Shown here: one piece after another, positions 44,326 to 58,827 of the stretch
How positions within the stretch are numbered: the stretch's first letter is position 1
Layout of the letters: the number at the start of each line of letters is the position of its first letter
Assembly (NCBI RefSeq): GCF_032062105.1
Contig: NW_026924258.1
Coordinates: 1 to 64,000 of the forward strand
Direction of reading: 5' to 3'
From: Saccostrea cucullata
Taxonomy: Eukaryota
Length of the DNA: 64,000 nucleotides
Notes under the pieces: generated by a model
The model's input: the letters and a program-made list of their open reading frames with translations, nothing else
Told to the model about the DNA's origin: nothing
Databases searched by the model: none
Translations under genes and position numbers: made by a program

Positions 44326-47300
44326 TTAGAATCCCAAAGCCTCCACAATCGCGTGCATTACACGCCCTCTATTGGCTGGACCACCCCTTCTTCCCCCTCC
44401 GGCTCCACCTCGCGCCCCGGGACCAAGGCCTAGTTCAGCCGCTTCCGCAGGATCCATCATCATTCCAGCTAACCTTGCTAGATCTCCAAATCCTCCACCA
44501 CCGCCTCGCCTTCGGCCTCCTCCTCCTCCCCACATTCCGCCGCCCCCTCCGGCTCCCCATCCTCCACCGCCACCACCTGCTGCTTGTCCTTGCTGACCTG
44601 CAGGAACATCACCAGCTTCAGGAGCAAGACCGAGCACCTCTTGCCATTGTCTGGACATCCTTCGGCCGCCTCCTCGTCCTCCTGCCGGAGGCCCCCAAGG
44701 ATCAGGACCTGGCTGTGCCCACGGGTCTGCAGCTCCTGCTGCTCCACCGGCCCTTCCTCCTCCTGGGCCCCAAGGATCGGCTGCACCAGCACCACCTGCT
44801 CCTCCCCAGGGATCTGCACCACCACCAGCCACATTCCATGGATCTGCTGCACCCCAGCCGCCTGCCCCACCGCCGGCGCCGCCCATAGCGCCACCTCGTC
44901 TCCGGGCGCCAGCTGCTGGCGGATCTGGGGGTTCAGGAGCTAATCCTAACATCGTGATAAGCTGCTTACTCATGGCAGTTTCTACTGCTCTTTGTACCGG
45001 GTCTGGAGTTGTAGGTGGGGGTGGTGGTTGGTAATTTGATCCGGAACCACCTGACGCAGTGTTGTTGTTGTAATATGCATATTGGTCTTGTCTCTGTCGT
45101 CTTTGCTGTTCTTGACGCTTTCGAATCTGACTTCTGTATCCTTTCCCGACTATATACGGATCCCGTGGGTAGCTTCGTCGTCTTGGGAGCCGAAGGAATC
45201 TTCTCAGCTCTGGTAAAATGTTCAGGACGGCTGTACTTACGGATCCCTTGAGATGGGCAGGATTGATGTTCATGGATCTGAGGAAGTCGGCACCAGTGGC
45301 GTAAAGAAGTGTCATTATGGTTTGTTGGTTTTGTCCCATTGAGCGTATCATGCTTAACATGACGTTTCTGAAATGAAATAATGAAATTTAGATATATGTT
45401 ATTTTATACAGGAAATACAAATGAAAAATCTTTTGTTAAAATGTAACCAGTTTTCTATCAATTTGCAATCGATCGTTAAAAATGAAACACACTTGTTGAG
45501 CGCGTAAAATTAACAAATTTAACAAAATGTTTTATCAGAATTACGAAAAATACGAAGGTCATTCAAAAAGTTCGTAGACTTTTATCCTAACTTTTTTATT
45601 TAACGTCATATTATATCCAAATTTGGTACAAATATTTTAACAACGGAGCACCGTCAAAATTGAATATTTTTCTAATTTTCACTTTATAGTATTTACAGCT
45701 ATACCTCTAATAAATGAAGCTGAAACGAAATAAAATTTACATGTTTAAATAAAGTATTGTTGTATTAATTAAAATGAAATCAGGTTATGTAATATCTCGC
45801 TCCATTTAAAAGACATCAGCTTCTAAATACATAAGGACTTGATTGAAAAAGGCAAAAAGCCATGACGTTGGAGGACGTCACGGAGCAGCAAGTAGCAATA
45901 AAATTAGACTTTACATTCGGGAAACTTCTTCTACAAGCTTAAAAATCTATTTAAACCAGGATCTGTATGAAAAATAATCCGTGTGTTTGTATTAAATTAA
46001 AAATACAATTTTTGAGTGGTATCGAGTTTGAATCGGACGATGAATTGTCTGCAAAGAAACAGGTTAAAGATAAAAATATTGTCAAAAGAGTTAGGAACGT
46101 CATTGAACGTGATGTGTGCTTCAGTGTTGCAGAAATAATAGAGTTGCATAGTAATTTAAAGAATTTGAAAATAATAACATTCTTATTCAAGCTATATTTG
46201 TACAATTGTTAGCAAACTAGGTGTTAAGTGTTGTGGATATGTGTTTTATGGATAAAACTACAAACCGTGTTAGAAATAAAAAAAAATGAGTATACTTCTG
46301 ACAAACTTTCTCTGCGTCGTTGTTTACGTTACAATATTGGATAACCGTGCTCCGTGGTAACAAAACTTGTTGCTTTAAATTTTGGCTAACATGAGTTCTA
46401 TTTAATCAAATGGAATGAAACTTCTCACTTCGACAAAATAAATGTTTATGTTTACGAAAATGTATTGATCTACAATCTTGTAATAATCATATGACGATGA
46501 GAAGCATTGTCTACGTATTTTTTGAATGACCCTCGTACATCTTTACAAATCAAGCAAGAAAACCTAAATCTTCTATAGTCTTGGCTACTTTAACTTTTAT
46601 TATGCTTTATCCCCTTAACAAAGCGTTCGTAATCAAATACATGTAGTTTGCCGGGTTATTGCCATCGTAACGCTACCTCGACCGATCTTCACGTCTCTCA
46701 CCTTGATATTGGATCCACAGACTCGGGGGTCAGATCCTTAACGTCAATAATAACGGGAGGTTCTGTTGGGATCGGGGTTGTTGTAGTTGGAGCCATTGTT
46801 GTGGTAGTTGGTGGAGGTACATTAACTGGAATATCGAACCGAGAGGACCCGACTTCAAGGAAGTTATTCCATTTATTGACATTGTTTCCCATGGACTGGG
46901 TGTCAATATTTATCTGAGTGTTCATCGAGTTCATTTTATTAGCAGAGGATTCTACTCCTAGACCCCAGGCAGCCTGGCTAGATTCTGTAGGAATCGCTTG
47001 TACATTATTGGAAGATTGCATCATGTTAGATGAACTAGAAGAAAAGGATCCACGGCCGCCGCCAGATTGGAATGAATTGGTTGAGTCAAATGTGTTAAAT
47101 GAGTCTGAAACGCTTGTCTTATATGACTTTGAAGAACCCATAGTATCGAAAGAGCCAGCTGCTCCAACTGTATTAGACTTGTCGTAATTATTAACAACGG
47201 AACTGCTACTATATGACAAAGAACCACCAGTCGAAACGCCCCTGCCTTGTGAAGATGCGTCAACTCCACCTGCTCCCACTTGGAACCCAGATAGTGATTG

Positions 47301-50300
47301 AAGGTTAACGAAAGAGGCGTCCCAAGGGGTAGTGGCCTGTGTTGTTGTAGTTGGACGTCTTCTGGTAGTTGTAGGTGGTGGAGCGGCAGTCGTTAAAGGT
47401 GATGGAGCTCTTGTGGTGGGCACTGGTGGCGGGCGTGTAGGAGGCGGTTGTACAACTGGCTGTTTAACCTCTTGAACTCTAACCTCTTTTGTTAATGAAC
47501 CAGCTTTATGCATCTGTCCTCTTGAAGTTGTTTTTCCTTGGCTAGTTGAGGATGCAGATCTCGAGGATGATGAAGAAGAGGCTGAAATACTCTTTGAGGA
47601 AGAAAGGGAAGAGCTTGAAGAAGCTCCTGTATTTTCAACGGAGTAAGCTGCATCCCAAGCTCCTGCAGAATTTCCGATAGTTGACTCAATCGGCAAAGTA
47701 GGGTCTATGAAAGCAGCGTCCCATGAAGATCCAGAAGTTCCAGTCCCTATGTCCATTACAGAAGTTCCAGCACCTATGTCTATTCCACTATTTGCTGTAT
47801 TATCAAAGACGTATGTAGTGTCCCAAACATTATTAGCTGCTGTACCTAAGTTAGCAGTATCCATCATAAGATCAACGTTTCCTGTCAAAGCAGTGTTGCC
47901 CCATTCTGGCGCTATGTTACCCATTCCAATGGAATCAATCATACTGGCATCCATTGTTTGTCCATCTACAGCCATATTTCCAACACCAGTCATGTCCATA
48001 GCTGAGCCACCTGCAACGTTAAAGGAAGAGTCGACAGTTGTTGATGTTTTAGAGGATACAGTGTCAATTTTTGTTTTTTCAACTGCAGGTGCCTCTGTTT
48101 GCGGTGGTAATTGGGTTGCAGGTGCGGCTTCTTTTGTGATCTTTACTTGTGAAGAGGATTCCGAGGCAACATTTGTAGATTTATCTACTACGGTATCTCC
48201 ACGTTGCACTTCTATTTTATTTGTTGCTATTTTATCCTTTTTCACATCTCCTTGCACAACTTCACTAGCAGAAACCAAATTAGATTCTGTTTTTACCGAC
48301 GTTGACGAAGAACTTACAGATTTTTGAGTGTCAACCTTGTTTGCATTATCCAAAGTAGTAGCTGTTGGAGCTCCAGCAATTTGGTTAGTCATCTGAATCT
48401 TCATTGACTGATCTGTAGAATACGGGAATGTTTGTTTGCCGCCCATCTGAACTTTAAGCATGATATCCGTCAGAGCCTTAAACATATTGGCTAATATGGC
48501 ATTTGGATCCCGTGCTGTGTTCTTTGATTTTTCGGCCTGTGTATCAATTTTACTCTCACTTACAGTGCTAGTTTTCGTCGAAATAACAGTATTTTGATCT
48601 CCTTGAGACCTTGTCTTTGTGTTTCCACCTGTAACTGTTTGTTCCACGGATGCTGACATCAATGTTTTACTGTTTTCATTTCCACGTAATCCATCAACTT
48701 TATTTGCTGTTCTGCTTGTTTCTATAGTTGATTTTGAGTCTGTTTTTCCTTTGCTCGTAACTTCTGTATTAATTTTGCTTGTTTCTACAGCTGTCTTTCT
48801 TTCAGCTGTGGAGGAACCTTCTGTTTTTGTCACTTCAACAGTGTTGAATTGAGTATCTTTTGTCACTTCAGAGGTAGAAATTGATGAATGTGCAGATTTT
48901 CCTGTAATGCTTTGACTAGGAGCAAGCGATTGTGCTGTAACTGCTTTAAGCTGAGGGATAGGTCTGTCTCCCATATCAATTTGTTCATTAGTGGACACGA
49001 TGACTTGTTTAATTATAGGTGCTGGAGGTGGAGTTAATTTACTAGATGATTTTTCCGCAGATAATACAGTGTAAGAGGAATCCGATTGACCCGTCATTGA
49101 TTTTTCCACTTTTGAATTTGATTGAATTGAAGACGATTTCATTTCAGATAGAGATGATGATGACATAACTGAAATATCAGCGCCGTGAGTTAAGGGTTTA
49201 GATGCCTTTACCGGCTCTGTTGTAATTTCTTGTGTTGTTGGAGCTTCAGTTGTCGTAGTTGGGGCCTGTGTCGATGTTGTAGTCGTTGGTTCCTTTGTAG
49301 TTGTTGTTGAACGTCTAGTCGTCGTTGTTGGTGTTGTTGTTGGGGTTGTCGTTGGTGCTTGTGTGGTTGTTAGAACCTCTGTGGTCGTCGGTGCCATCGT
49401 AGTTGTCGTCGTAGCTTCTGTCGTTGTAGTAGATGTCGTAGTTGTGGCTTCCGTCGTAGTAGTTGGGGCGGCTGTTGTTGAAGTGGTAGGAGGAGGAGTG
49501 GTTTCTGGTAAAGAAGTTACGAATCCCATTCCAAACGTTGAGTCGTGTGCAACTTGGCCACCTGCAGAGAGAACTGGACCAACTTCTAAAGCTGTTGTAT
49601 CTGTCAATCGCAGGAGTGTATGGTCTATTCCACTAGGAATGATTCCAGCATCATAACCAGACGAAAGCGCGTGGCCACCAAAATTTGATGAAATCATGGA
49701 GCCTTGATTAACATTATCATTTGGGGAACCTTGAGAGAAACTTATATCAGCTGCTGATGATCCTGTGCCCCACTGGTCCAAACCGCTCATCATATTCGTG
49801 TCATATTGAACAAATGTACCAGTGTTTTGCATTCCTGGTGCACTATCAATCATCATATTTGGTTCCCCAGGAGGAAGGGGTATTGATTCCACTGGGCCTG
49901 CAGTCAAAAATTGTTCGCCAGCATTGCTTGCAAAAGAAGACTGAGATGTTAAAGATGAGGTTTGATCCAATAATAATGAATCCATTGTTTGGGCATTTGA
50001 TCCAGAGGTAGGTAACCAGGTATCACCTCCCATGTTTGGCTGAGGATCTGGTGGCAAATTAAAATTGAATTGATAAGGATCGTTCATGCCATACTGAAGC
50101 CCTAACCCTTGATTAAGTCCTTCTACGACCAAATTCTGATTTTGTTGTGCATTTTCTATACCATTTGAAATTCCCCATTGACTGCTACCTTGACCACCAA
50201 TGTTGATACTTCCCTTTATAAGAATTGGGTTTGAAATCAACTGATCATTGGTCTGTGCTGCTTGAGAAGTTTTCAAATTCGATCCACTGTCCGGTGGAAG

Positions 50301-53300
50301 CGTACTTGGTGGTATTTGTGGTGGAAGTGTTGTTTCAACAATCCCAGAAGTTTTGGATTTCTGAGAGGAAGAATCTTGAACAATTTTGGAATTCACTTCT
50401 AGAACAGTCGCACCGGTCGTGACTTCATTTGGCAGAATAGTGATGACTTCTAAATTTTTCATAGTACTCGATTCCACAGGTTGTTGAATATTGATATCTC
50501 CATTCAGAGTTTGACGAGTTTCTTTGGTGGTCTCTACTTTCAGGCTTCCTTGGTTAGGAATGACTTCCCATTTTCCTCCATTGGAGAACATGCTAGAACC
50601 AGACGATGCACTGTTTGATTGCGAACTTGAAGATACTGAAAAGGAGGATGATGAGGAAGAAAAGGAAGAAGACGAAACCATGGGCTTTGAAGATATCTTC
50701 CTCACCGTTGTTGTATTGACCTCAACCGACTCGGTTCTGGGAGTGTCAGGTCGAACTTGTTGCGAGTTAGATGCTAGTTTATGTGCAATTTTTCGGGAAG
50801 GATTGGGTTCTCTCTTCTCTAACAATATTTTTTCTATCGCTTCAGATTTTACATTTGGTAAAAAGTTATTAGGATTCAGAGTTTTGCTGGTATCTTTGTT
50901 TCTTTGGCCCATCAATGTGAGTTCACGTCTGGCAGAAAAAGAATTCGTAGCTTCTTTCCGTGGGGAGAAGTTTCCGCCCAGTGTGACTTCCATTCTCTGT
51001 GTTTGTGTGTTTGCAGTATTAACTCTGTTTTTACCCTCCTCTACTGTTTGGATATCTTCTTTAACTTTCACCCTTTGATTGTCTATCTGCTTTTCCTGTT
51101 GTAGAGTTACTTGTCCTGATTCTTTTGTGGATGACACTACTTCAGATCTAACCTCAGGAATAACCGGCTTCTGCATCTTTGTTTCAGCTTCCATCGACAC
51201 CTGGCCTACGTCTTGATGTCTCTGACTTGACATCTTCTGGGTCATTAAAAAGGAATTTTTGGCTTCAGTTTCAGACACTTGAGACATTTTACTGTATCCA
51301 AGATCAGCTGGGCGGCTAGAGAGTGATCCTCCGGTAATAGTAAGAGAGGGCCCCGACATTGACGAGGGAAGTACGTAATTGTTGTTATTGCTGGGAATAA
51401 CAACAGTCTGAGGATATAAAGCCTCGCTTTCGGGTTTAGATGATTTTTGATCTACAATGACTTCAGTTCTTTTAATGGAAACTGTTTTGTCTGTCTTTGT
51501 CTGTGGAGCTACTAATTCTCTTGATTTTGTTTTAGCGGAAATCACCGGCTTTGATAATACCAATTCCTTTTCTAACGTGGATCCTTTATTGATTTTGGAA
51601 GAAACATTAATTTTCGGTAATGCAGGTTGTGACAAGGCTGGCTTTGTCTCTTTGTCCATATTTGTTGTATCGATTTTAACGTTTTCAGTCTGTGTTGTCA
51701 AAACATCTGACTTTGCCTCGTTTTGAGTTTGGATTTCAGCTCCAGACATCTGGTGACCATTTGAAGATATGTGCTTTGTTATAGTTGTATTTGTGATATT
51801 TGTTGAAATTGAAGGACGATTTACGTTAGACCGGACCTGCTGATTTACGTTCACCTCTGCAGATCCACCAAGGGTTTGTATTGGCACGCCTCCAGATCCA
51901 CTAAAAGATGACATTCTATTTAAAATAGTTTTCCCGTTGAGAAAATCTCTCGCAGAGATTCTTAAGCCGCCTTGATTTCTGCTCTGGACAAAAGATGGTG
52001 TTACTCCGCGGTTCTTCTTTCTTATCTCGGTACGGATTACTTTTTTAATACCACTGGGTGTATTTGTGACTTGAACGGTTTGAATAGTCTCAGCATTTCC
52101 ACCTTGTTTCACGTGTTTTACAAGCTTTCTTAGTTTCTCTAAAGCCAAGGAAACAGCTGAATGTGGTTTTCTGTCTATTCCGCTATGGGTGTTGTTAACA
52201 ACAAAAGAGACGGTATGAACCGTTTTTGGTCCTGGGATCCCCGGAATCACCCTTGATGCCAACCCACTTCTGATTGGTACTGAACTGTCAAAGCCCGAGG
52301 AGGATTCCGATCCTGAGGTTGCTGATGACGCTGACCATTTTACAGACCTTAAAGGAGATGACTGGGACATTGAAGAAGATGAAGACGAAGTTGATGAAGA
52401 TTTAACAACCATAGAGGAAGATCCCATATTTGTCTTGATTGGTGGAAATGGAGGGGAAATAAGCCCAGTTTGTCCTTTCATTGAACCCAGAAGCCCGGAT
52501 GTGTGGCCAGTGTTCCCATTAGCATTAGATCCTGAAAAACTCAATGTGGTTTTCTTTACAGAGAAAGTTCCATGTGCCTGAGTAACTGGGTTTGGAGTCA
52601 CTAGCGTAGTTCTTTTTGAGCGAGATAAAATCTTTCCATTAAACTCTGAGGTTGACTTAAATCGATTAAGAAGGTCTGTAGGATTGATTGTTTCTTTAGC
52701 CTCTGCACCTACTTTGGCGTCGGTGGCCACTTGTTCTTCTACATTTGCCGCTCCCTCCCCGAGGTAAGGCAGCATAATGCCCTTGGGTTTCGGCACATTT
52801 CCAATTGAGACGCTTGGAAAAGCAACATCGACGTCCTTCCTCATCTGCACCTCATTATTAGCCACCTTATTCGATGTGCGAACATTTCCATTAAAATCAA
52901 AAATAGGTACAATTGGTTCGAGTTTGGCTTCGTTTTGTAAGTATCTAAATTCCGATCCCGATGTTTGTTTTTCAGTCGTAGAGGATTTGATATTTCTTTT
53001 GAGAATCGCTTCAGGTGGTAGGATGGCTATGTCTGCGCAGTTGTAATATTCCTCTTGTGGTCCACATCCGGTACGGCTGGTGCCATCCGGGCACTTTCCC
53101 CAGTTCATAGCTGCAATAAAGAACCAAAATTTATTTTGATAACATAATTATTTTGGTAACCATAGTTATTTATTTTTTTAACAAATACTGATCACAACTA
53201 CTAAACAATGATTTTGAAAGTCGTTTGGTGTATTTTTATTTACGACCTTAATATTGAGAGTGACTTAAAAGCTATACATATGTAGTAGTCCGAAGAATTA

Positions 53301-54007
53301 GGTGGTAATGAAGTCTAATGAAGTCCCACATAAAAAAAGAATGTTTCTTGTACAAAAAAATGATATTTTTAAAAGATCAAATCAGTGAGTGTTTTCTTCT
53401 GATTATGTTTTCACCTAATTTTAGGAAATACCGTAAATCTGGAAATTTTTGCTGTAGATAATTTTTTGTTTTGCATTAGCAAAAATATTTTTCTAAAAAT
53501 AAATTTAAGAAAATGTAAACAAAATACAAAATTTTGAAACGTAAAAAATATTTTCGCAAAATAAAAGGTAAAAATTCCATTTGTACATAAAATAGGGTAT
53601 TCCATGTTATAAAGAATTAATAGAAATGACCTTCGACCTCAGACCACTTTATATCGGAATGTTTACATATCTATCTCTTTTAACGAAAATAAGAGTCTTT
53701 CTTTCTTCTTTTTTTTACTGATTAGTATTCATTACTGTTGAACTTCATTCAAATCTACTCATGTTAATAAATGAAGAAAAAGAGATAAGATTTCTTCTCT
53801 CTCCTGTTTAACCAAAACCAGACTCACAGAAAATCACACGTATTTCATTTTTTGGACAGTTTATATCATGCCCACACGTCAAGTCCAAAGACCATCAAGT
53901 AAAAAAATTGAGTAGTAAGATTTGTTTTTATGACTATCATTTTATTACCTAAAGCAGCTCTCTTATTAAATTTTTTTCGCTTTTCTTCTTCTTCTTCTTC
54001 TTTTTTT

Positions 54008-54046
<39 letters not shown>

Positions 54047-57000
54047 CTAATGAATTTTTTTCAAAAACCTTTGAAATTAATATATTATAGAAAAATTGAT
54101 TATTTCATTTTCAAAAAAGATTACATTTAGGTTAAAAGAAATAAATAAAAGATTCAAATGATCTATTTACTTTTCAACTGATCTTTTTCCTTGTCTGATT
54201 TTTTTAGGGGGGAAGGTAAATGAAATTTTTCAATGCTCTTGAGGTTAACATACATTTTTTACCAAACAAAAAAATGATTTTGACATTTCGACAAAGAATA
54301 CTTTAACGTAATTAGAAATAGTAACTATTACAGGACATATTAGATTTTTTTCAATTGAAGTTTTATTGATCAATTAATTACAAAATTTATTTATTGGTAT
54401 AAAAAAATTATGAACCATATGTTTAGATTCAAAACTCTGTAATGTATAAATTAAAAAAAAAATGGAGTTAAATATTATTGTGTTTGTTTGTTTTTCGTTG
54501 TTTCTTATTTGTATAACATAGCATACCCTCGGGCATGTGCATTGACATGTGTAATCCATGACCATTTTAAGGACAATAAAAGGCTTGTTTTTCTCCCGTA
54601 CGGTTATCATTAAGTCTGCATAAAAATGTCCGAAACAATTTGCCGCCGTTTAATGTGATGGTCATACACAGGTCACGCGCGCGGTCATAATTTTGTAATT
54701 TAAAGAAACCGCTATGAAGATTAATCTGCAATGTATGGCGATTAAAGTCAGATCTATACATCTATACATATTATGGGTATTTACACAATGTACATTATAA
54801 TTTCATATGGTACAAACTCGATTTATTTAGAAATGCCTTTTGCCCTTTTAATAATTTACTAATTCATTTATTTATTTTGGGATACCTCAATAACAAAAAA
54901 TTACCATGCTGCCAAATCCCATTCACTTTTACTTGTGAATAGAATTTTGTATAAAATAAAAAGTACCCCATTTCTATCTAACTAAATTTCAGTACCCCGC
55001 AGTTCAAACTCGCATTTTCTTACTTTATTATTCATAAACATACATACTTTAACAACCAATAATTTGTTTTGATGTACTTTTTTCTTTTCAATTAAATCGT
55101 TTCAGACATCCTTCTGAGCCCTTTTTATAAACCATTCACATATTCCTCGATTTAAGTCTTAAAAGTTTTAAACGTTTGTACGGGATACAGAGACCTGAGA
55201 CTTCAAACTAAAAAGCTTGGAGGACTCCAGTTTTTTCAGGCATTATAAACTCAGTCTGAAATTTATGCATTACGTGTTTTAAAAGTGTGTCGAGACAATT
55301 ATCGATACATAAATGATTGTTACCATAACTTGGCTCGAAGATTCGAATTCTAGTTTGAACAATTCATTAGAAAACCAGATCTCTAAGCGAATTGTCTCTT
55401 GTAAAATAGATTAATGCTTCACAAAGTAATAGAGCTCAATTTTGAAGTATTGATGTTTAAACTGTCATTGAGTTATGGTAAGAATTAGTTGCGTATCTTT
55501 TACACGGAATACGTGTTTGTGGCTCTGGCCTTGAAAATCATCAATTATCTACATGTACCTGTTCGCCATTTCCACTGCAAAACACATCTTTCACATGCGA
55601 CCCCGCTCGGAAGTAGAATTCTCAGGTGGACCATACCCTCTTGCATCGGTTCAAAGCGCTTTCCGTGACCATCAATCTCCAAAGGATATCTATCCAAACA
55701 CGCCTGCGTCACCGGAACTGAATCTGATACTTCCGGACACAAACGGAATTCAAAATATCCTCTCATGTTTTTCTTCACTTCCACAATAGCGTTTATAATA
55801 GTGTCATTTGTACTGTAGTACCGGGAAATAAGTCCATTTGAAAATTTCCCGCCAACCTCGTTTGAATGAGGTGTGACGTCATGAGGGTCACCACAAACCC
55901 CACATTTCCCAGAATTCAACTGCCACTGGCGCTGCAAGTAAAAACGAAGAATTTGATACACATTCACTTTTTTTTTAAATGTATGCACTTATAATATGCA
56001 CAATTGAGCTCTTCTTTACATGGCATTCATCAATTTTTATTTCAGTGTATTGCATTTAAGTTTCAAATGATAAAAATCATGTCTAAAACTGTGTATCTAT
56101 TATAACAGCATGAGTGAGCATCCTTGTTTCTCAAGAAAGTCCTTTTAATCTTGACCTCTGTTATAATAATTTATTTATTAATTAGAGTAATTTCATAAAT
56201 CTGATTGTCTTGTGTCGATTGGTCGTGAGGCAATGCAGTCATGTATTTCGCATATATATATTATCGTTCTCTATGGATAAACATGCAAACATCAAACAAT
56301 TTTCGGCCAATGTCCTTTTTCCGCTTGGTTGCTTTTTTCTTTTACAGTTGCCACATTAATCTTTTTTATCTACTTAATAAGACAGTTTATAAATAGATAC
56401 ATTTATAGAGCCGCGTGCTCGATTAAGATTGTTTTATTGAAATTTCATGACTGTGTATTTATTATTTGACATGGAAACACGTTGAATGTGTCCCTATGTA
56501 GAATTCAGCTGTCAACATTTCTGTATCACATTTGATTGTGTTCAAAAATATCGCTGTTTTAACAGGGTATAAGGTATCAGGCGTATGAAATCTGATAGGA
56601 TAATAATTTTACATTCAGAAAAAAAAAATTGAGGCACTAAATTTTAATACATATATAACAGATGTTCTCGGCAAGCTCAGATAATTTATATCTTTATACG
56701 AGAAAAAAAAAACAATTAAAAAGGGGGATTTTAAAAACACGAATTATAGCATTGAAACTATGTGTAAGATAAATTAATATCAGATAGAAATGTTTTTCCT
56801 GAAATATGTATTTTAAATTTTTCTGTAACGACATTAACAAGAAATGGAATAATCTATATAAGACAAATTGGGAAATCTTTCTTACCCAGTATCCTCCGCA
56901 GTTCAATCCATCATCATCACGATTGATTGGACTTTTAAATCCTCGTCGCCATAGTGATGACCTTTGTGCTGGTTCTAAAAGGCGCCCTCTGGCGTTAATA

Positions 57001-58827
57001 AGTGATACTAAAGTTGAAACAAAGGCGGCAGCAAAAAATATACTGAAAGAAAAAAATACATCTCTAGCTATCTAAGATTCAAAGGTCAACTGACAACTCT
57101 AAATGTAGATGTGTGCAAGTTTTATGAAATTATATTATTCTGTCGAAAAAATCAACATTTTCAATTTATGCGAAGAATATGATTATATATATGTTGTGCA
57201 ACTTTTAAAAATCTTTCATTAGGTTTGTTGATATATTCCCCTCATAACAATGATAATATATTTTTCATCTTAGCAAAAAGTATATGTATTTAGGTATATT
57301 TTTTGTGCCACTTTGAAAAAAAATCTCATGATATCAACAGTCCATTGGCCTTTTTATATTCCAGATTATTTGAATCGTGGGAAGATGAGCTTATTTGTCA
57401 ACGGGCCATTCTATTACCCTGTCATTTGTGATTCTTTATGTCCGGAGATGTAGAATAATAAAAAAGATCATGCGTTATGCAAAGGTCAAAAGTTGAGATG
57501 AATTCACCATAGTTCTTCATAAATGTGTCTGCGTGAAGACTTAATTTCATGTTACTAGTTTCAAATGTTTTTCTCCGATTCTTATATAGAATTATTTTCT
57601 TATATCGACGATGCATTTTTTTTACTATGGTTTTATTTCAGTAGTTGGTACTTGAAATCATAGACCCACTTTACACATAGAAATGTCAGCATGGAATTCG
57701 AATTGCTTTGGCATCAAAAAGTTCTTGAAAATTTTCATGTACAATATATTATTTTATAATTTTTTTAAAAAGAAAAAGTGGGTAATTTTTGTAAGATATA
57801 CGTGTGTACAATAAGTTTGAATAATTTCTTTTAAAATCATGAGGCTGATGATTATTTCAAAAGTGACGTCATAGTCTTTATCGTTTACCTATATCTGTTT
57901 TATTTCATATAAAAAAATATCAGTTGATGACACTACTGTAAACAAAATATATTGTTCTTATACATGAACGTATACATTTTTATGTTTGAGAATACATGTT
58001 ACCAAGTGATACAGAATATTCTTCAATTATATTAAGTTTCCAGTAAATGTCGCCACCATAATTATTTTATGATCTTCGCATCTTGCCCGCTGATCTCGCG
58101 ATATCTCGGTAAATCTCGTAATGGATACAGCACTCTATTTTTGATAGGATGAACGTGTCTGCGGTTTTTTTATGTGGCGACGGCTTGCTGGGGACCAGAA
58201 CTCAATTTAGAAATGTCATTTCAAAAATAGATTTCTTCAATATAACAATAAACAAAGACTACTAGATGAAAATATTCCCATTTAAATTTTATTATCACTG
58301 CGAATGTTGTATTAATATATATTTAATTTTTTTGTCTTGTTCAAGGAGGAAGTTGTAGAAATCAAAATCAGAGCATCTCATGAATATATAAGAATTTTAA
58401 AGTTATTCTTAAAAATATTGCTAACTTCTTTTGAATATTCTTTCATTCTAGCTTTTAGTTCCTTTCACTATTTCTTGACTTTTTTAAAAGTAGATTTTTA
58501 TATTAGTAAAACATTTTGCATAAAAAAATATCGTCATGCCTATGTTTATTAAACATCTCTGCTTTGAAAAAAATATTGCAATGTAATCAATCATGATGTC
58601 AATTAGATAAAAATGAATCATATGATTAGATTAGCTATACATTAAGTACAGTAACTTCTTTTTTTCTGATAAAATTAGTAGTTTTTAAGCTATGGGTTAA
58701 CTTGATAAATCAGAAAGCAACCAAATTTTTGATTAAATTAATATTTGGTTAAAATATTTTTTTTTCTTGTAAAACTGCAAAAAAGCATGAAAATAAACAT
58801 TTACCTTTTCCTCTTAAAGCGAATCAT
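44326..58827 (-). CDS. Gene E: giant secreted AA15-type LPMO-like (chitin-binding type-4) protein lacking the histidine brace, with a Ser/Thr-rich region of about 2100 aa and a Gly/Ala/Trp-rich C-terminus (about 2667 aa)
   Basis: Exons 58827-58805 (MIRFKRK), 57042-56886 (SIFFAAAFVSTLVSLINA-RGRLLEPAQRSSLWRRGF..LNCGGYW), 55931-55559 (GKCGVCGDP..KKNMRGYFEFRLCP..CERCVLQWKWRT), 53110-46702 (NWGKCPDGTSRTGCGPQEEYYNCADIAI, then low complexity), 45367-44326. The 8004 nt join in frame with GT-AG introns. Confidence 0.88.
45553..46535 (+). mobile_element. Degenerate mariner-like transposon in the last intron of gene E
   Basis: TA|CGAAGGTCATTCAAAAAGTTCGTAGAC ... GTCTACGTATTTTTTGAATGACCCTCG|TA. The remnant KLKIQFLSGIEFESDDEL resembles the mariner transposase C-terminal LxGxxFxSDEE motif. 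Confidence 0.75.

What the first reader, a model, noticed from the sequence alone, without database searches (positions are those of the whole stretch)
53020..57042. Animal AA15 LPMO-like domain with both histidine-brace residues replaced (His1->Arg, His2->Met)
Seen: after the predicted signal peptide (..VSLINA) the mature N-terminus reads RGRLLEPAQRSSLWRRGF (Arg codon at 56990-56988), and the second-His motif reads VEVKKNMRGYFEFRLCP (Met codon at 55766-55764). The scaffold motifs and cysteines are intact (CGG, GKCGVCGD, CxxCVLQW, NWGxCPDG, GCGPQEEYYNCADI), and the ORF stays open for about 2667 codons. Known: AA15/AA10 LPMOs start with His (HGRLxEPPxRxSMWRxGF) and carry a second His in TANHxGYFEFRLCP; the two form the copper histidine brace. 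A fungal AA9 subgroup with N-terminal Arg and no brace has been described. Inference: this is a maintained, copper-independent pseudo-enzyme that converged on the same Arg substitution in an animal. The added Arg/Lys residues may make the former active site a cationic patch that binds chitin or anions in shell or adhesive matrix.
Basis: partly seen in the sequence, partly recalled or inferred. Interest (0 to 1): 0.9.

Follow-up and report, generated by a model that had tools for sequence, protein, structure and literature searches.

The report
Copper-less AA15 head on oyster mucin
An oyster-type bivalve gene encodes a giant secreted mucin-like protein whose N-terminal domain has the fold of a copper enzyme (AA15 LPMO) but has lost both copper-binding histidines, yet is expressed, conserved across bivalves and under strong purifying selection, so it most likely works as a non-catalytic binding module.

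Summary
The Arg codon (56990-56988) aligns with His1 of the solved AA15 enzyme 5MSZ, and the Met codon (55766-55764) aligns with His91. Tyr184 and all ten cysteines are kept.

The gene has five exons on the minus strand (58827..44326). All introns are GT..AG, and the coding sequence is 8001 nt, or 2667 codons. It encodes a signal peptide, a braceless AA15-like domain, about 2100 residues of Ser/Thr-rich tail, and a conserved Gly-rich C-terminal module.

- **Expression:** a spliced RNA contig joins exons 2 and 3 exactly and carries both codons.
- **Close ortholog:** the Saccostrea echinata protein keeps Arg1 and Met91. Domain dN/dS is 0.05 at dS 0.40.
- **Wider clade:** Arg1 relatives occur in Pinctada (N-terminus absent from its model), Potamilus, Mytilus, Argopecten and Solemya. 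They form one supported clade. Position 91 varies among M, K, L, I and V.
- **Paralogs:** three further paralogs in this genome have also lost both histidines.

The core reading, a maintained copper-less pseudo-LPMO, is well supported. The cationic-patch and shell or adhesive ideas are not: the extra charges are conserved only in near orthologs, and the tissue is unknown.

I found no paper describing braceless AA15 proteins. I class this as a new variant of a known kind, the animal counterpart of fungal Arg-AA9.

The parts
58805..58827 (-). Coding part of exon 1: the ATG plus seven codons (MIRFKRK) and 2 nt, followed by the donor AG|GTAAAT. It supplies the positively charged start of the signal peptide.
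   Evidence: This was the only short in-frame ATG exon with a strong donor in the right phase (sequence). It aligns at 21 of 23 nt with the annotated CDS start of the S. echinata ortholog, whose protein begins MIRFKSKS. The X3 RNA contig has 47 further letters 5' of exon 2 that did not lie on 52700-58600. No reads were laid on this junction.
56886..57042 (-). Exon 2. It holds the hydrophobic core and c-region of the signal peptide (57042-56991, ending ..LINA) and the first 35 residues of the AA15-like domain. The Arg codon AGA at 56990-56988 stands in the place of His1.
   Evidence: The acceptor is a polypyrimidine tract plus CAG, and the donor is TGG|GTAAG. The RNA contig covers 56886-57045 and joins to 55931.
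55559..55931 (-). Exon 3, the central 124 residues of the AA15-like domain. The Met codon ATG at 55766-55764 stands in the place of His91, within KKNMRG where canonical proteins have TANH(K/R)G.
   Evidence: The RNA contig covers 55760-55931, including the Met codon, with no change there.
53022..53110 (-). Start of exon 4, the last 30 or so residues of the AA15-like domain. It includes Trp at the Tyr166 position, three cysteines and the retained axial Tyr184.
46702..53021 (-). Rest of exon 4, about 2106 residues of Ser/Thr-rich tail: S+T 27.7%, no cysteine, three Pro/Thr mucin-type blocks, pI 8.6, no transmembrane stretch and no Pfam domain. It ends at the donor AG|GTGAGA; the apparent stop at 46700-46698 is intronic.
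   Evidence: dN/dS against S. echinata is 0.17.
44326..45367 (-). Exon 5, a 346-residue C-terminal module: Gly 24%, Ala 13%, Arg 9.5%, five DPW repeats, pI 11, ending ..IVEALGF and a stop.
   Evidence: Acceptor and frame are. It is 90% identical to the C-terminus of the S. echinata protein and matches the Pinctada, Solemya and Potamilus C-termini. dN/dS is 0.048. No Pfam family matches.

Best explanation
This is a real, expressed five-exon gene of an oyster-type bivalve. It encodes a secreted protein of about 2667 residues.

After signal-peptide cleavage (..INA|RGR..) the protein starts with an AA15 LPMO-fold domain. In that domain both copper ligands are replaced (His1 to Arg, His91 to Met), and so are two neighbouring active-site residues (Ala89 to Lys, Tyr24 to Arg). 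The disulfide scaffold, Trp166 and the axial Tyr184 are kept. Without the histidine brace the domain cannot hold the catalytic copper, so it is not an oxidase.

The domain is kept under strong purifying selection as a non-catalytic module. Most likely it is a glycan-binding head (chitin is the family's substrate) that anchors a long O-glycosylated mucin-like tail and a conserved Gly-rich C-terminal module in an extracellular matrix or mucus layer.

**Shown:** the sequence facts, the splicing of exons 2-3, conservation and selection, and fold retention in a clade member.

**Inferred:** no copper binding, the signal-peptide cleavage site, glycosylation, the ligand and the tissue.
For: - **Ligand positions:** Arg and Met align to His1 and His91 of 5MSZ. 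These two columns are His in 61 of 61 canonical relatives.
- **Expression:** a 379-nt RNA contig from a separate study skips 954 nt between 56886 and 55931 with GT..AG ends and carries both codons.
- **Close ortholog:** the S. echinata protein (2642 aa) has the same N-terminus (..LINA then RGRLLEP), KKNMRG and the same C-terminus. NG86 dN/dS is 0.052 for the domain (dN 0.021, dS 0.40), 0.17 for the tail and 0.048 for exon 5.
- **Deeper orthologs:** a metagenome-borne bivalve locus has ANA then RGRMIEP, with Lys at position 91. Potamilus and Solemya have Arg1 with Leu; Pinctada has Met at position 91, with no N-terminus in its model.
- **One clade:** on the full-domain tree, with the trait columns removed, the Arg1 proteins of both subgroups form a clade with SH-aLRT 96. 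Solemya has a member of each subgroup, so the duplication predates the split of living bivalves.
- **Joint loss:** the two histidines are lost together in this genome: R/M, R/I, R/R and F/S, against H/H in all other paired copies.
- **Fold kept:** the AlphaFold model of the Solemya clade member has pLDDT 98, TM 0.95 and rmsd 1.3 A to 5MSZ.
- **Secretion:** the hydrophobic leader has small residues at -1 and -3, and no transmembrane stretch lies downstream.
Against: - No metal-binding, activity or glycan-binding measurement exists.
- Tyr24, one of two aromatic residues said to bind substrate in TdAA15A (PMC9156745), is lost here and in most braceless relatives. Chitin binding may therefore be altered or lost.
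- The window's own domain could not be folded, because a spliced model may not be joined. The fold evidence comes from a relative that is 54% identical over exon 3.
- Only the exon 2-3 junction has read support. Three oligo-dT RNA runs of the species had no reads on any exon, so the expressing tissue is unknown.
- The signal-peptide cleavage site was judged by rule, not by a predictor.
Confidence: 0.75

Rival explanations
1. The braceless domain is kept for a ligand other than chitin, for instance an anionic or sulfated glycan, a mineral face or a partner protein. Arg1 would then be a new functional residue rather than a filler.
For: Arg1 is conserved across the whole clade while position 91 drifts among M, K, L, I and V. 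Tyr24 is lost in most braceless members. The axial residue is Tyr in 7 of 8 braceless full-length relatives, against Phe in 56 of 61 canonical ones. Both Arg subgroups share a one-residue insertion in a loop. Domain dN/dS of 0.05 indicates a precise, demanding function.
Against: No ligand data exist. Trp166 and the overall flat-face scaffold are kept. The other basic residues near the site are not conserved outside oysters and pearl oysters.
Confidence: 0.3
2. The domain still binds a metal or keeps redox chemistry through other ligands: the N-terminal amine, Met91, Tyr184 or the nearby His residues of exon 3.
For: Met and Tyr can ligate copper in other proteins (my own knowledge). Tyr184 is retained. 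The two oyster sequences carry His at exon-3 positions 17 and 22.
Against: Position 91 is K, L, I or V in orthologs, and the two His residues are W/Y and R in other clade members. No alternative ligand set is conserved. Fungal LsAA9B, with the same His1-to-Arg change, is reported to have no copper site and no activity (PMC10354095, PMC6950343).
Confidence: 0.04
3. The gene is a decaying copy, or the odd codons are assembly or annotation artefacts.
For: No reads from three oligo-dT RNA runs fell on the exons. Exon 2 lacks its own ATG.
Against: There are 2667 codons with no stop and four canonical introns. A spliced RNA contig from another study shows the same codons. The orthologs carry the same residues, and dN/dS is 0.05. 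The upstream ATG exon matches the ortholog's annotated start.
Confidence: 0.02

Closest known systems
TdAA15A, the AA15 LPMO of Thermobia domestica (PDB 5MSZ; PMC5823890)
   Same: Same sequence family and fold. It is the only PDB hit for all three exon pieces. The clade member's model matches it at TM 0.95. The ten cysteines, Tyr184 and the secreted N-terminal position of residue 1 are shared.
   Different: His1 is Arg, His91 is Met, Ala89 is Lys and Tyr24 is Arg. A tail of about 2450 residues follows, whereas TdAA15A is the catalytic domain alone.
Fungal Arg-AA9 proteins such as LsAA9B of Lentinus similis (Frandsen et al. 2019, as cited in PMC6950343 and PMC10354095)
   Same: An LPMO-fold protein that naturally carries Arg in place of the N-terminal His. 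It has no copper site and no activity was found, yet it is kept as a subgroup.
   Different: A different LPMO family (AA9, not AA15) and kingdom, so the loss was independent. The fungal group is described as a recent offshoot (PMC6950343). The bivalve clade predates the split of living bivalves and is fused to a giant tail.
AA15 proteins with disordered Ser/Thr-rich C-terminal regions (PMC8615602)
   Same: The architecture of an LPMO domain followed directly by a long Ser/Thr-rich disordered extension. The paper reports this for about a third of AA15 sequences.
   Different: Those were catalogued as LPMOs. Here the head has no histidine brace, the tail is exceptionally long, and it ends in a conserved Gly-rich module.
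Saccostrea echinata 'serine-rich adhesin for platelets-like' protein (P0193, assembly GCA_033153115.1)
   Same: The ortholog. It has the same exon order, 88-95% identity in the head and in exon 5, and Arg1 and Met91.
   Different: It carries only an automatic name taken from its Ser-rich tail. I found no study of it.
Insect peritrophin-type intestinal mucins, which combine CBM14 chitin-binding domains with mucin domains (my own knowledge, not tested here)
   Same: The proposed logic is the same: a non-catalytic chitin-binding head or heads fused to O-glycosylated mucin stretches in an extracellular chitin matrix.
   Different: The binding fold is unrelated. The analogy is functional only and unproven for this protein.

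Membership tests
AA15 lytic polysaccharide monooxygenase (catalytic) | Sequence and fold homology to AA15 / Pfam LPMO_10 | tested here: met
   5MSZ is the only PDB hit, with E 7e-24, 3.3e-6 and 8.9e-9 for the three exon pieces. LPMO_10 scores 25.7 bits against a cut-off of 23 on exon 3 alone. The clade member's model matches 5MSZ at TM 0.95.
AA15 lytic polysaccharide monooxygenase (catalytic) | His as first residue of the mature protein (copper ligand 1) | tested here: not met
   Arg (AGA, 56990-56988) aligns to His1. This column is His in 61 of 61 canonical relatives. The RNA contig shows the same codon.
AA15 lytic polysaccharide monooxygenase (catalytic) | Second histidine of the brace (His91 in TdAA15A) | tested here: not met
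   Met (ATG, 55766-55764) aligns to His91. This column is His in 61 of 61 canonical relatives.
AA15 lytic polysaccharide monooxygenase (catalytic) | Axial aromatic residue (Tyr184, or Phe) and ten conserved cysteines | tested here: met
   Tyr aligns to Tyr184. The cysteines number 1 + 6 + 3 in exons 2, 3 and 4.
AA15 lytic polysaccharide monooxygenase (catalytic) | Copper binding and oxidative cleavage of chitin or cellulose | not testable with these tools
   This needs purified protein (ICP-MS or EPR, and product analysis).
Brace-less LPMO-like pseudoenzymes of the Arg-AA9 type (functional class) | LPMO fold with a natural His1-to-Arg change, maintained in a clade | tested here: met
   Arg1 occurs in the window gene and in the Saccostrea, Potamilus, Solemya, Mytilus and Argopecten proteins. 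They form a clade at SH-aLRT 96. dN/dS is 0.052.
Brace-less LPMO-like pseudoenzymes of the Arg-AA9 type (functional class) | Belongs to family AA9 | tested here: not met
   All sequence and fold matches are to AA15. AA10 and AA13 structures follow far behind, and no AA9 chain appears among the matches listed.
Secreted mucin-like glycoprotein | Signal peptide, long Pro/Thr/Ser-rich stretches, no membrane anchor | tested here: met
   The leader ends ..LINA, with a mean hydropathy of 2.05. The tail is 27.7% S+T with three P/T blocks. The highest 19-residue hydropathy in the tail is 1.03. Glycosylation itself cannot be tested here.

The most novel reading that the evidence does not exclude
Bivalves carry an ancient family of 'Arg-AA15' proteins that dates to before the split of protobranchs from other bivalves. 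In this family the former copper site of an LPMO has been rebuilt around a free N-terminal Arg, together with an axial Tyr, into a new and highly constrained binding site. That site serves as the anchoring head of giant matrix mucins. It would be an animal parallel to fungal Arg-AA9, so LPMO scaffolds would have been turned repeatedly into non-redox binding modules by the same first step.
Probability: 0.35. Interest if true: 0.7.

Novelty: new variant of a known kind. Interest (0 to 1): 0.55.

Why it matters
LPMOs are defined by the copper histidine brace. The founding AA15 paper stresses that the brace is conserved across animals (PMC5823890). The only described natural brace-less subgroup is fungal Arg-AA9, whose function is still unknown.

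This gene belongs to a second, independent and much older Arg-headed group in animals. It is under strong constraint (dN/dS 0.05) and has a clear architectural context: the head of a giant mucin-like protein with a conserved C-terminal module. That gives three things:
- a tractable system for asking what an LPMO fold does without copper;
- a warning for annotation, since these proteins are currently named 'chitin-binding type-4 domain' or, wrongly, 'serine-rich adhesin for platelets-like', and would be counted as LPMOs in CAZyme surveys;
- candidates for chitin-associated matrices of bivalves, whether shell, gill rods, gastric shield or mucus.

Tried and rejected
- **ATG at 57061 plus a poly-T slip.** I considered a start at 57061-57059 in another frame, joined to the RGR frame by a one-base poly-T assembly error. 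I rejected it for three reasons. The RNA contig leaves the genome at the CAG acceptor near 57043-57045. The distant ortholog L022 has the same phase-2 acceptor with no ATG. The S. echinata CDS start aligns to 58827.
- **First scan for the upstream exon.** A strict CAG|GT search found nothing. A relaxed scan gave 57 candidates, and only the one at 58827-58805 had a strong donor and a basic n-region.
- **AU test on the large tree.** A test that the two Arg subgroups form one clade on the 164-row exon-3 tree did not finish in three 288-s runs. I dropped it in favour of a 70-row full-domain tree.
- **Exon-3-only tree.** This tree is poorly resolved, with 76 of 161 forks open. I do not rely on its deep order.
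- **P0028.** This 87-residue hit at 66% identity looked like an odd ortholog. Forty of its 70 DNA differences are C-to-T, so it is most likely a contig from a bisulfite library of a related species. I use it only as a weak sign that KKNMRG is kept.
- **Pfam.** Scans of the tail, exon 5 and three other window ORFs found nothing above cut-off.
- **Literature.** Searches for braceless AA15, LPMO in shell matrix and the automatic protein name gave no study of this group. Only open-access papers and bioRxiv were searched.
- I reran it without that row.
- **Joined spliced protein.** The exons were searched apart, and a stored relative (P0004:99-288) was folded instead.
- **Earlier findings.** The search of earlier findings returned only this same finding.


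Full report
**1. What is in the sequence**

Exon 2 (57042-56886) reads ..FVSTLVSLINA followed by RGRLLEPAQRSS.., with the Arg codon AGA at 56990-56988. Exon 3 (55931-55559) reads ..GKCGVCGD..VEVKKNMRGYFEFRLCP..CVLQWKWRT, with ATG at 55766-55764. Exon 4 starts at 53110 with ..NWGKCPDG..GCGPQEEYYNCADI...

Searched apart against all PDB chains, each piece finds only 5MSZ, the Thermobia domestica AA15 enzyme. E-values are 3.3e-6, 7e-24 and 8.9e-9. In the printed alignments:
- Arg lies on His1 and Met on His91.
- Trp lies on Tyr166 and Tyr on Tyr184.
- Lys lies on Ala89 and Arg on Tyr24.

His1 and His91 are the copper ligands of TdAA15A. Ala89 and Tyr184 complete the site, and Tyr24 and Tyr166 flank the binding face (PMC5823890; PMC9156745). 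Exon 3 alone passes Pfam LPMO_10.

**2. Gene model**

Exon 2 has no in-frame ATG and begins right after a polypyrimidine tract and CAG. A scan for short upstream ATG exons in the right phase gave one convincing candidate. It is ATG at 58827, seven codons (MIRFKRK) plus AG, then GTAAAT.

Exon 4's apparent stop at 46700-46698 lies just after a strong donor (AG|GTGAGA). A further exon, 45367-44326, continues in frame. All four introns are GT..AG with pyrimidine tracts.

Independent support comes from the annotated Saccostrea echinata protein P0193 (2642 aa):
- It starts MIRFKSKS.., continues ..LINA then RGRLLEP.., and ends ..AIVEALGF like exon 5.
- Its CDS start aligns to window 58827-58805.

The joined protein was not sent to any tool. 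The exons were handled apart.

**3. Expression**

One lay of reads was allowed. A 379-nt contig from a metatranscriptomic RNA run (X3) covers 55760-55931 and 56886-57045 and skips the 954 nt between them. The ends read CT..AC on the plus strand, which is GT..AG on the coding strand. That is the predicted exon 2-3 junction.

The contig includes both key codons unchanged. It has four listed differences: two synonymous, one Asn-to-Asp at position -2 of the leader, and one Ile-to-Met. It runs 47 letters further 5' that do not lie on the stretch laid, which ended at 58600. That fits the exon at 58805-58827.

Three oligo-dT RNA runs of the same species label gave no reads on any exon. They hit only a repeat in intron 3. 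The gene is therefore transcribed and spliced, but the expressing tissue is unknown, and the other three junctions have no read support.

**4. Relatives**

A scan of 1.84 billion representative proteins with exon 3 gave 1470 hits at E up to 0.001. Of the best 150, 74 with a readable N-terminus are His/His. All but one of the ten nearest hits to the window gene that span the column lack His at position 91, and those with a readable N-terminus start with Arg.

Named members are all bivalves: Solemya velum, Argopecten irradians, Potamilus streckersoni and Mytilus californianus. A second search added Saccostrea echinata, Pinctada imbricata, a further Potamilus protein and Mytilus trossulus.

The orthologs of the window gene share the full architecture, including the C-terminal motif:

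| Ortholog | Residue 1 / residue 91 |
|---|---|
| Saccostrea | R / M |
| Pinctada | unknown / M |
| Bivalve locus in a metagenome assembly (L022) | R / K |
| Potamilus | R / L |
| Solemya | R / L |

For P0005, a close match to the Pinctada sequence, a 2170-residue product lies 5 kb downstream.

Other brace-less states also occur:
- Q/N, Q/G and Q/Y in Dreissena, Mya and Sinanodonta;
- Q/Q in the brachiopod Lingula;
- N/R in the snail Bulinus;
- S/E in a second Dreissena protein.

Brace loss has therefore happened several times in lophotrochozoans.

**5. One Arg clade**

The exon-3-only tree of 167 rows is weakly resolved. It clusters the non-His rows with 8 changes, against a mean of about 30 for shuffled labels. 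It places the window gene with P0001, P0005, P0004 and three Leu-type fragments at SH-aLRT 93.

On a full-domain alignment (70 rows, 188 columns, with residue 1 and residues 88-92 removed), the Arg1 proteins of both subgroups form a starred clade at SH-aLRT 96. These are Solemya P0004, Solemya P0031 and Argopecten P0064. Both subgroups also share a one-residue insertion in a loop where 93% of canonical rows have a gap.

Solemya is a protobranch and has one member of each subgroup. The His-to-Arg change and the later duplication therefore most likely predate the radiation of living bivalves.

**6. Paralogs in the same genome**

The assembly (1.17 Gb) has at least 30 AA15 exon-3 matches. I paired exon-2 and exon-3 matches by contig. 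Most copies are H/H. Four have lost both histidines:
- C6395, this gene: R/M;
- C20565: R/I;
- C13160: R/R;
- C8366: F/S.

The two ligands go together, as expected if the copper site is abandoned as a unit.

**7. Selection**

Nei-Gojobori estimates against the S. echinata locus are:

| Part | dN | dS | dN/dS |
|---|---|---|---|
| AA15-like domain (188 codons) | 0.021 | 0.40 | 0.052 |
| Signal peptide | | | 0.29 |
| Ser/Thr-rich tail | | | 0.17 |
| Exon 5 | | | 0.048 |

Against the more distant L022 ortholog, synonymous sites are saturated (pS 0.86) while dN is 0.29. The brace-less head and the C-terminal module are the most constrained parts of the protein. This excludes a decaying relic.

**8. 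Fold**

I folded the Solemya clade member (P0004:99-288, Arg1/Leu91, 54% identical to the window over exon 3) with a 70-row alignment. Mean pLDDT is 98. Foldseek places it on 5MSZ at TM 0.95 and rmsd 1.3 A, with AA10 and AA13 LPMOs far behind. The scaffold is intact in the clade. The window's own domain was not folded.

**9. The cationic-patch idea**

In this protein the former site is ringed by R1, R24, K88, K89 and R92. Canonical proteins have Y24 (51 of 61), T88 (58), A89 (48) and N90 (47), and often K or R at position 92.

Only Arg1 is conserved clade-wide. K88, K89 and K/R92 are shared just with Saccostrea and Pinctada. The other orthologs have E, T, F, N or G there. Net charge of the domain is +2, against a canonical mean of +0.7 and a range of -13 to +10. 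The patch is real in oysters but is not the conserved feature.

A more general correlate is the axial residue. It is Tyr in 7 of 8 brace-less full-length relatives and in the window gene, against Phe in 56 of 61 canonical ones. That may reflect shared ancestry.

**10. Mechanism**

Most likely (about 0.75) this is a secreted, heavily O-glycosylated matrix or mucus protein whose N-terminal LPMO-fold module has become a non-redox binding head.
- **Shown:** loss of both ligands, retained scaffold, expression, clade-wide conservation and strong constraint.
- **Inferred:** no copper, cleavage before Arg, glycosylation, the ligand and the site of action.

Chitin is the default ligand by family, but the loss of Tyr24 leaves room for another.

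For context only:
- LPMO_10-domain proteins are listed among bivalve shell-proteome domains (PMC11464482).
- Two chitin-binding type-4 proteins mark a mantle cell type together with chitin synthase in the Pacific oyster (bioRxiv 10.64898/2026.05.15.723513).

Neither paper says whether those proteins are brace-less.

**11. Comparison and novelty**

By homology and fold this belongs to the AA15 sequence family. It fails the two defining catalytic features, so it should not be filed as an LPMO.

In kind it parallels fungal Arg-AA9. LsAA9B has no copper site, and no activity was found for a characterised Arg-AA9 (PMC6950343, PMC10354095). Long Ser/Thr-rich C-terminal extensions are already known for AA15 (PMC8615602).

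In the open literature searched I found no description of brace-less AA15 proteins. Database entries carry only automatic names. I rate it a new variant of a known kind, with interest about 0.55.

Noticed in passing
window 53426-53547 (intron 3): A short repeat is covered at depth 10-20 in all three oligo-dT RNA runs and much more deeply in the X3 contigs. It shows many 'opposite strands' joints (53450 to 53547) and loose ends that lead to varied flanks. It looks like a transcribed, hairpin-forming dispersed repeat of the MITE or SINE type, and not part of this gene's mRNA.
   Followed up: no
window 44326-45367 (exon 5): The Gly/Ala/Arg-rich C-terminal module has five DPW repeats and a terminal ..IVEALGF motif. 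It has no Pfam family, yet it is as constrained as the head (dN/dS 0.048). It is recognisable in the Saccostrea, Pinctada, Potamilus and Solemya orthologs. It appears to be an unnamed conserved module.
   Followed up: partly
G000 contigs C20565 (L002/L044), C13160 (L018/L029), C8366 (L015/L048), C8784 (L019): These are further AA15-like paralogs in the same genome without the brace: R/I, R/R, F/S and unknown/I. All other paired copies are H/H.
   Followed up: partly
alignment A1, column of TdAA15A Tyr184: The axial residue is Tyr in 7 of 8 brace-less full-length relatives but Phe in 56 of 61 canonical ones. This may be co-adaptation with Arg1/Gln1, or only shared ancestry.
   Followed up: no
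L051 / L052 (Logan contigs of SRR13207064 and ERR10960510): The contigs that encode P0028 differ from the window mainly by C-to-T changes (40 of 70 differences). This looks like an assembly of bisulfite-converted reads from a related species. Its odd 'protein' is an artefact of that.
   Followed up: partly
P0100, P0148, P0202, P0096: Brace-less AA15-like proteins also occur outside this clade: Lingula anatina (Q/Q), Bulinus truncatus (N/R), Dreissena polymorpha (S/E), and one domain of a multi-domain protein of the protist Hondaea (Arg at the His91 column).
   Followed up: no
window 53973-54055 (intron 3): A simple repeat with a long G run on the plus strand. The reads tool skipped it as a repeat.
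   Followed up: no
P0197, P0198, P0199, P0200, P0201: Long canonical (H/H) AA15 proteins of gastropods and Mytilus end in a shared Cys-rich C-terminal motif. It differs from the C-terminal module of the Arg clade.
   Followed up: no
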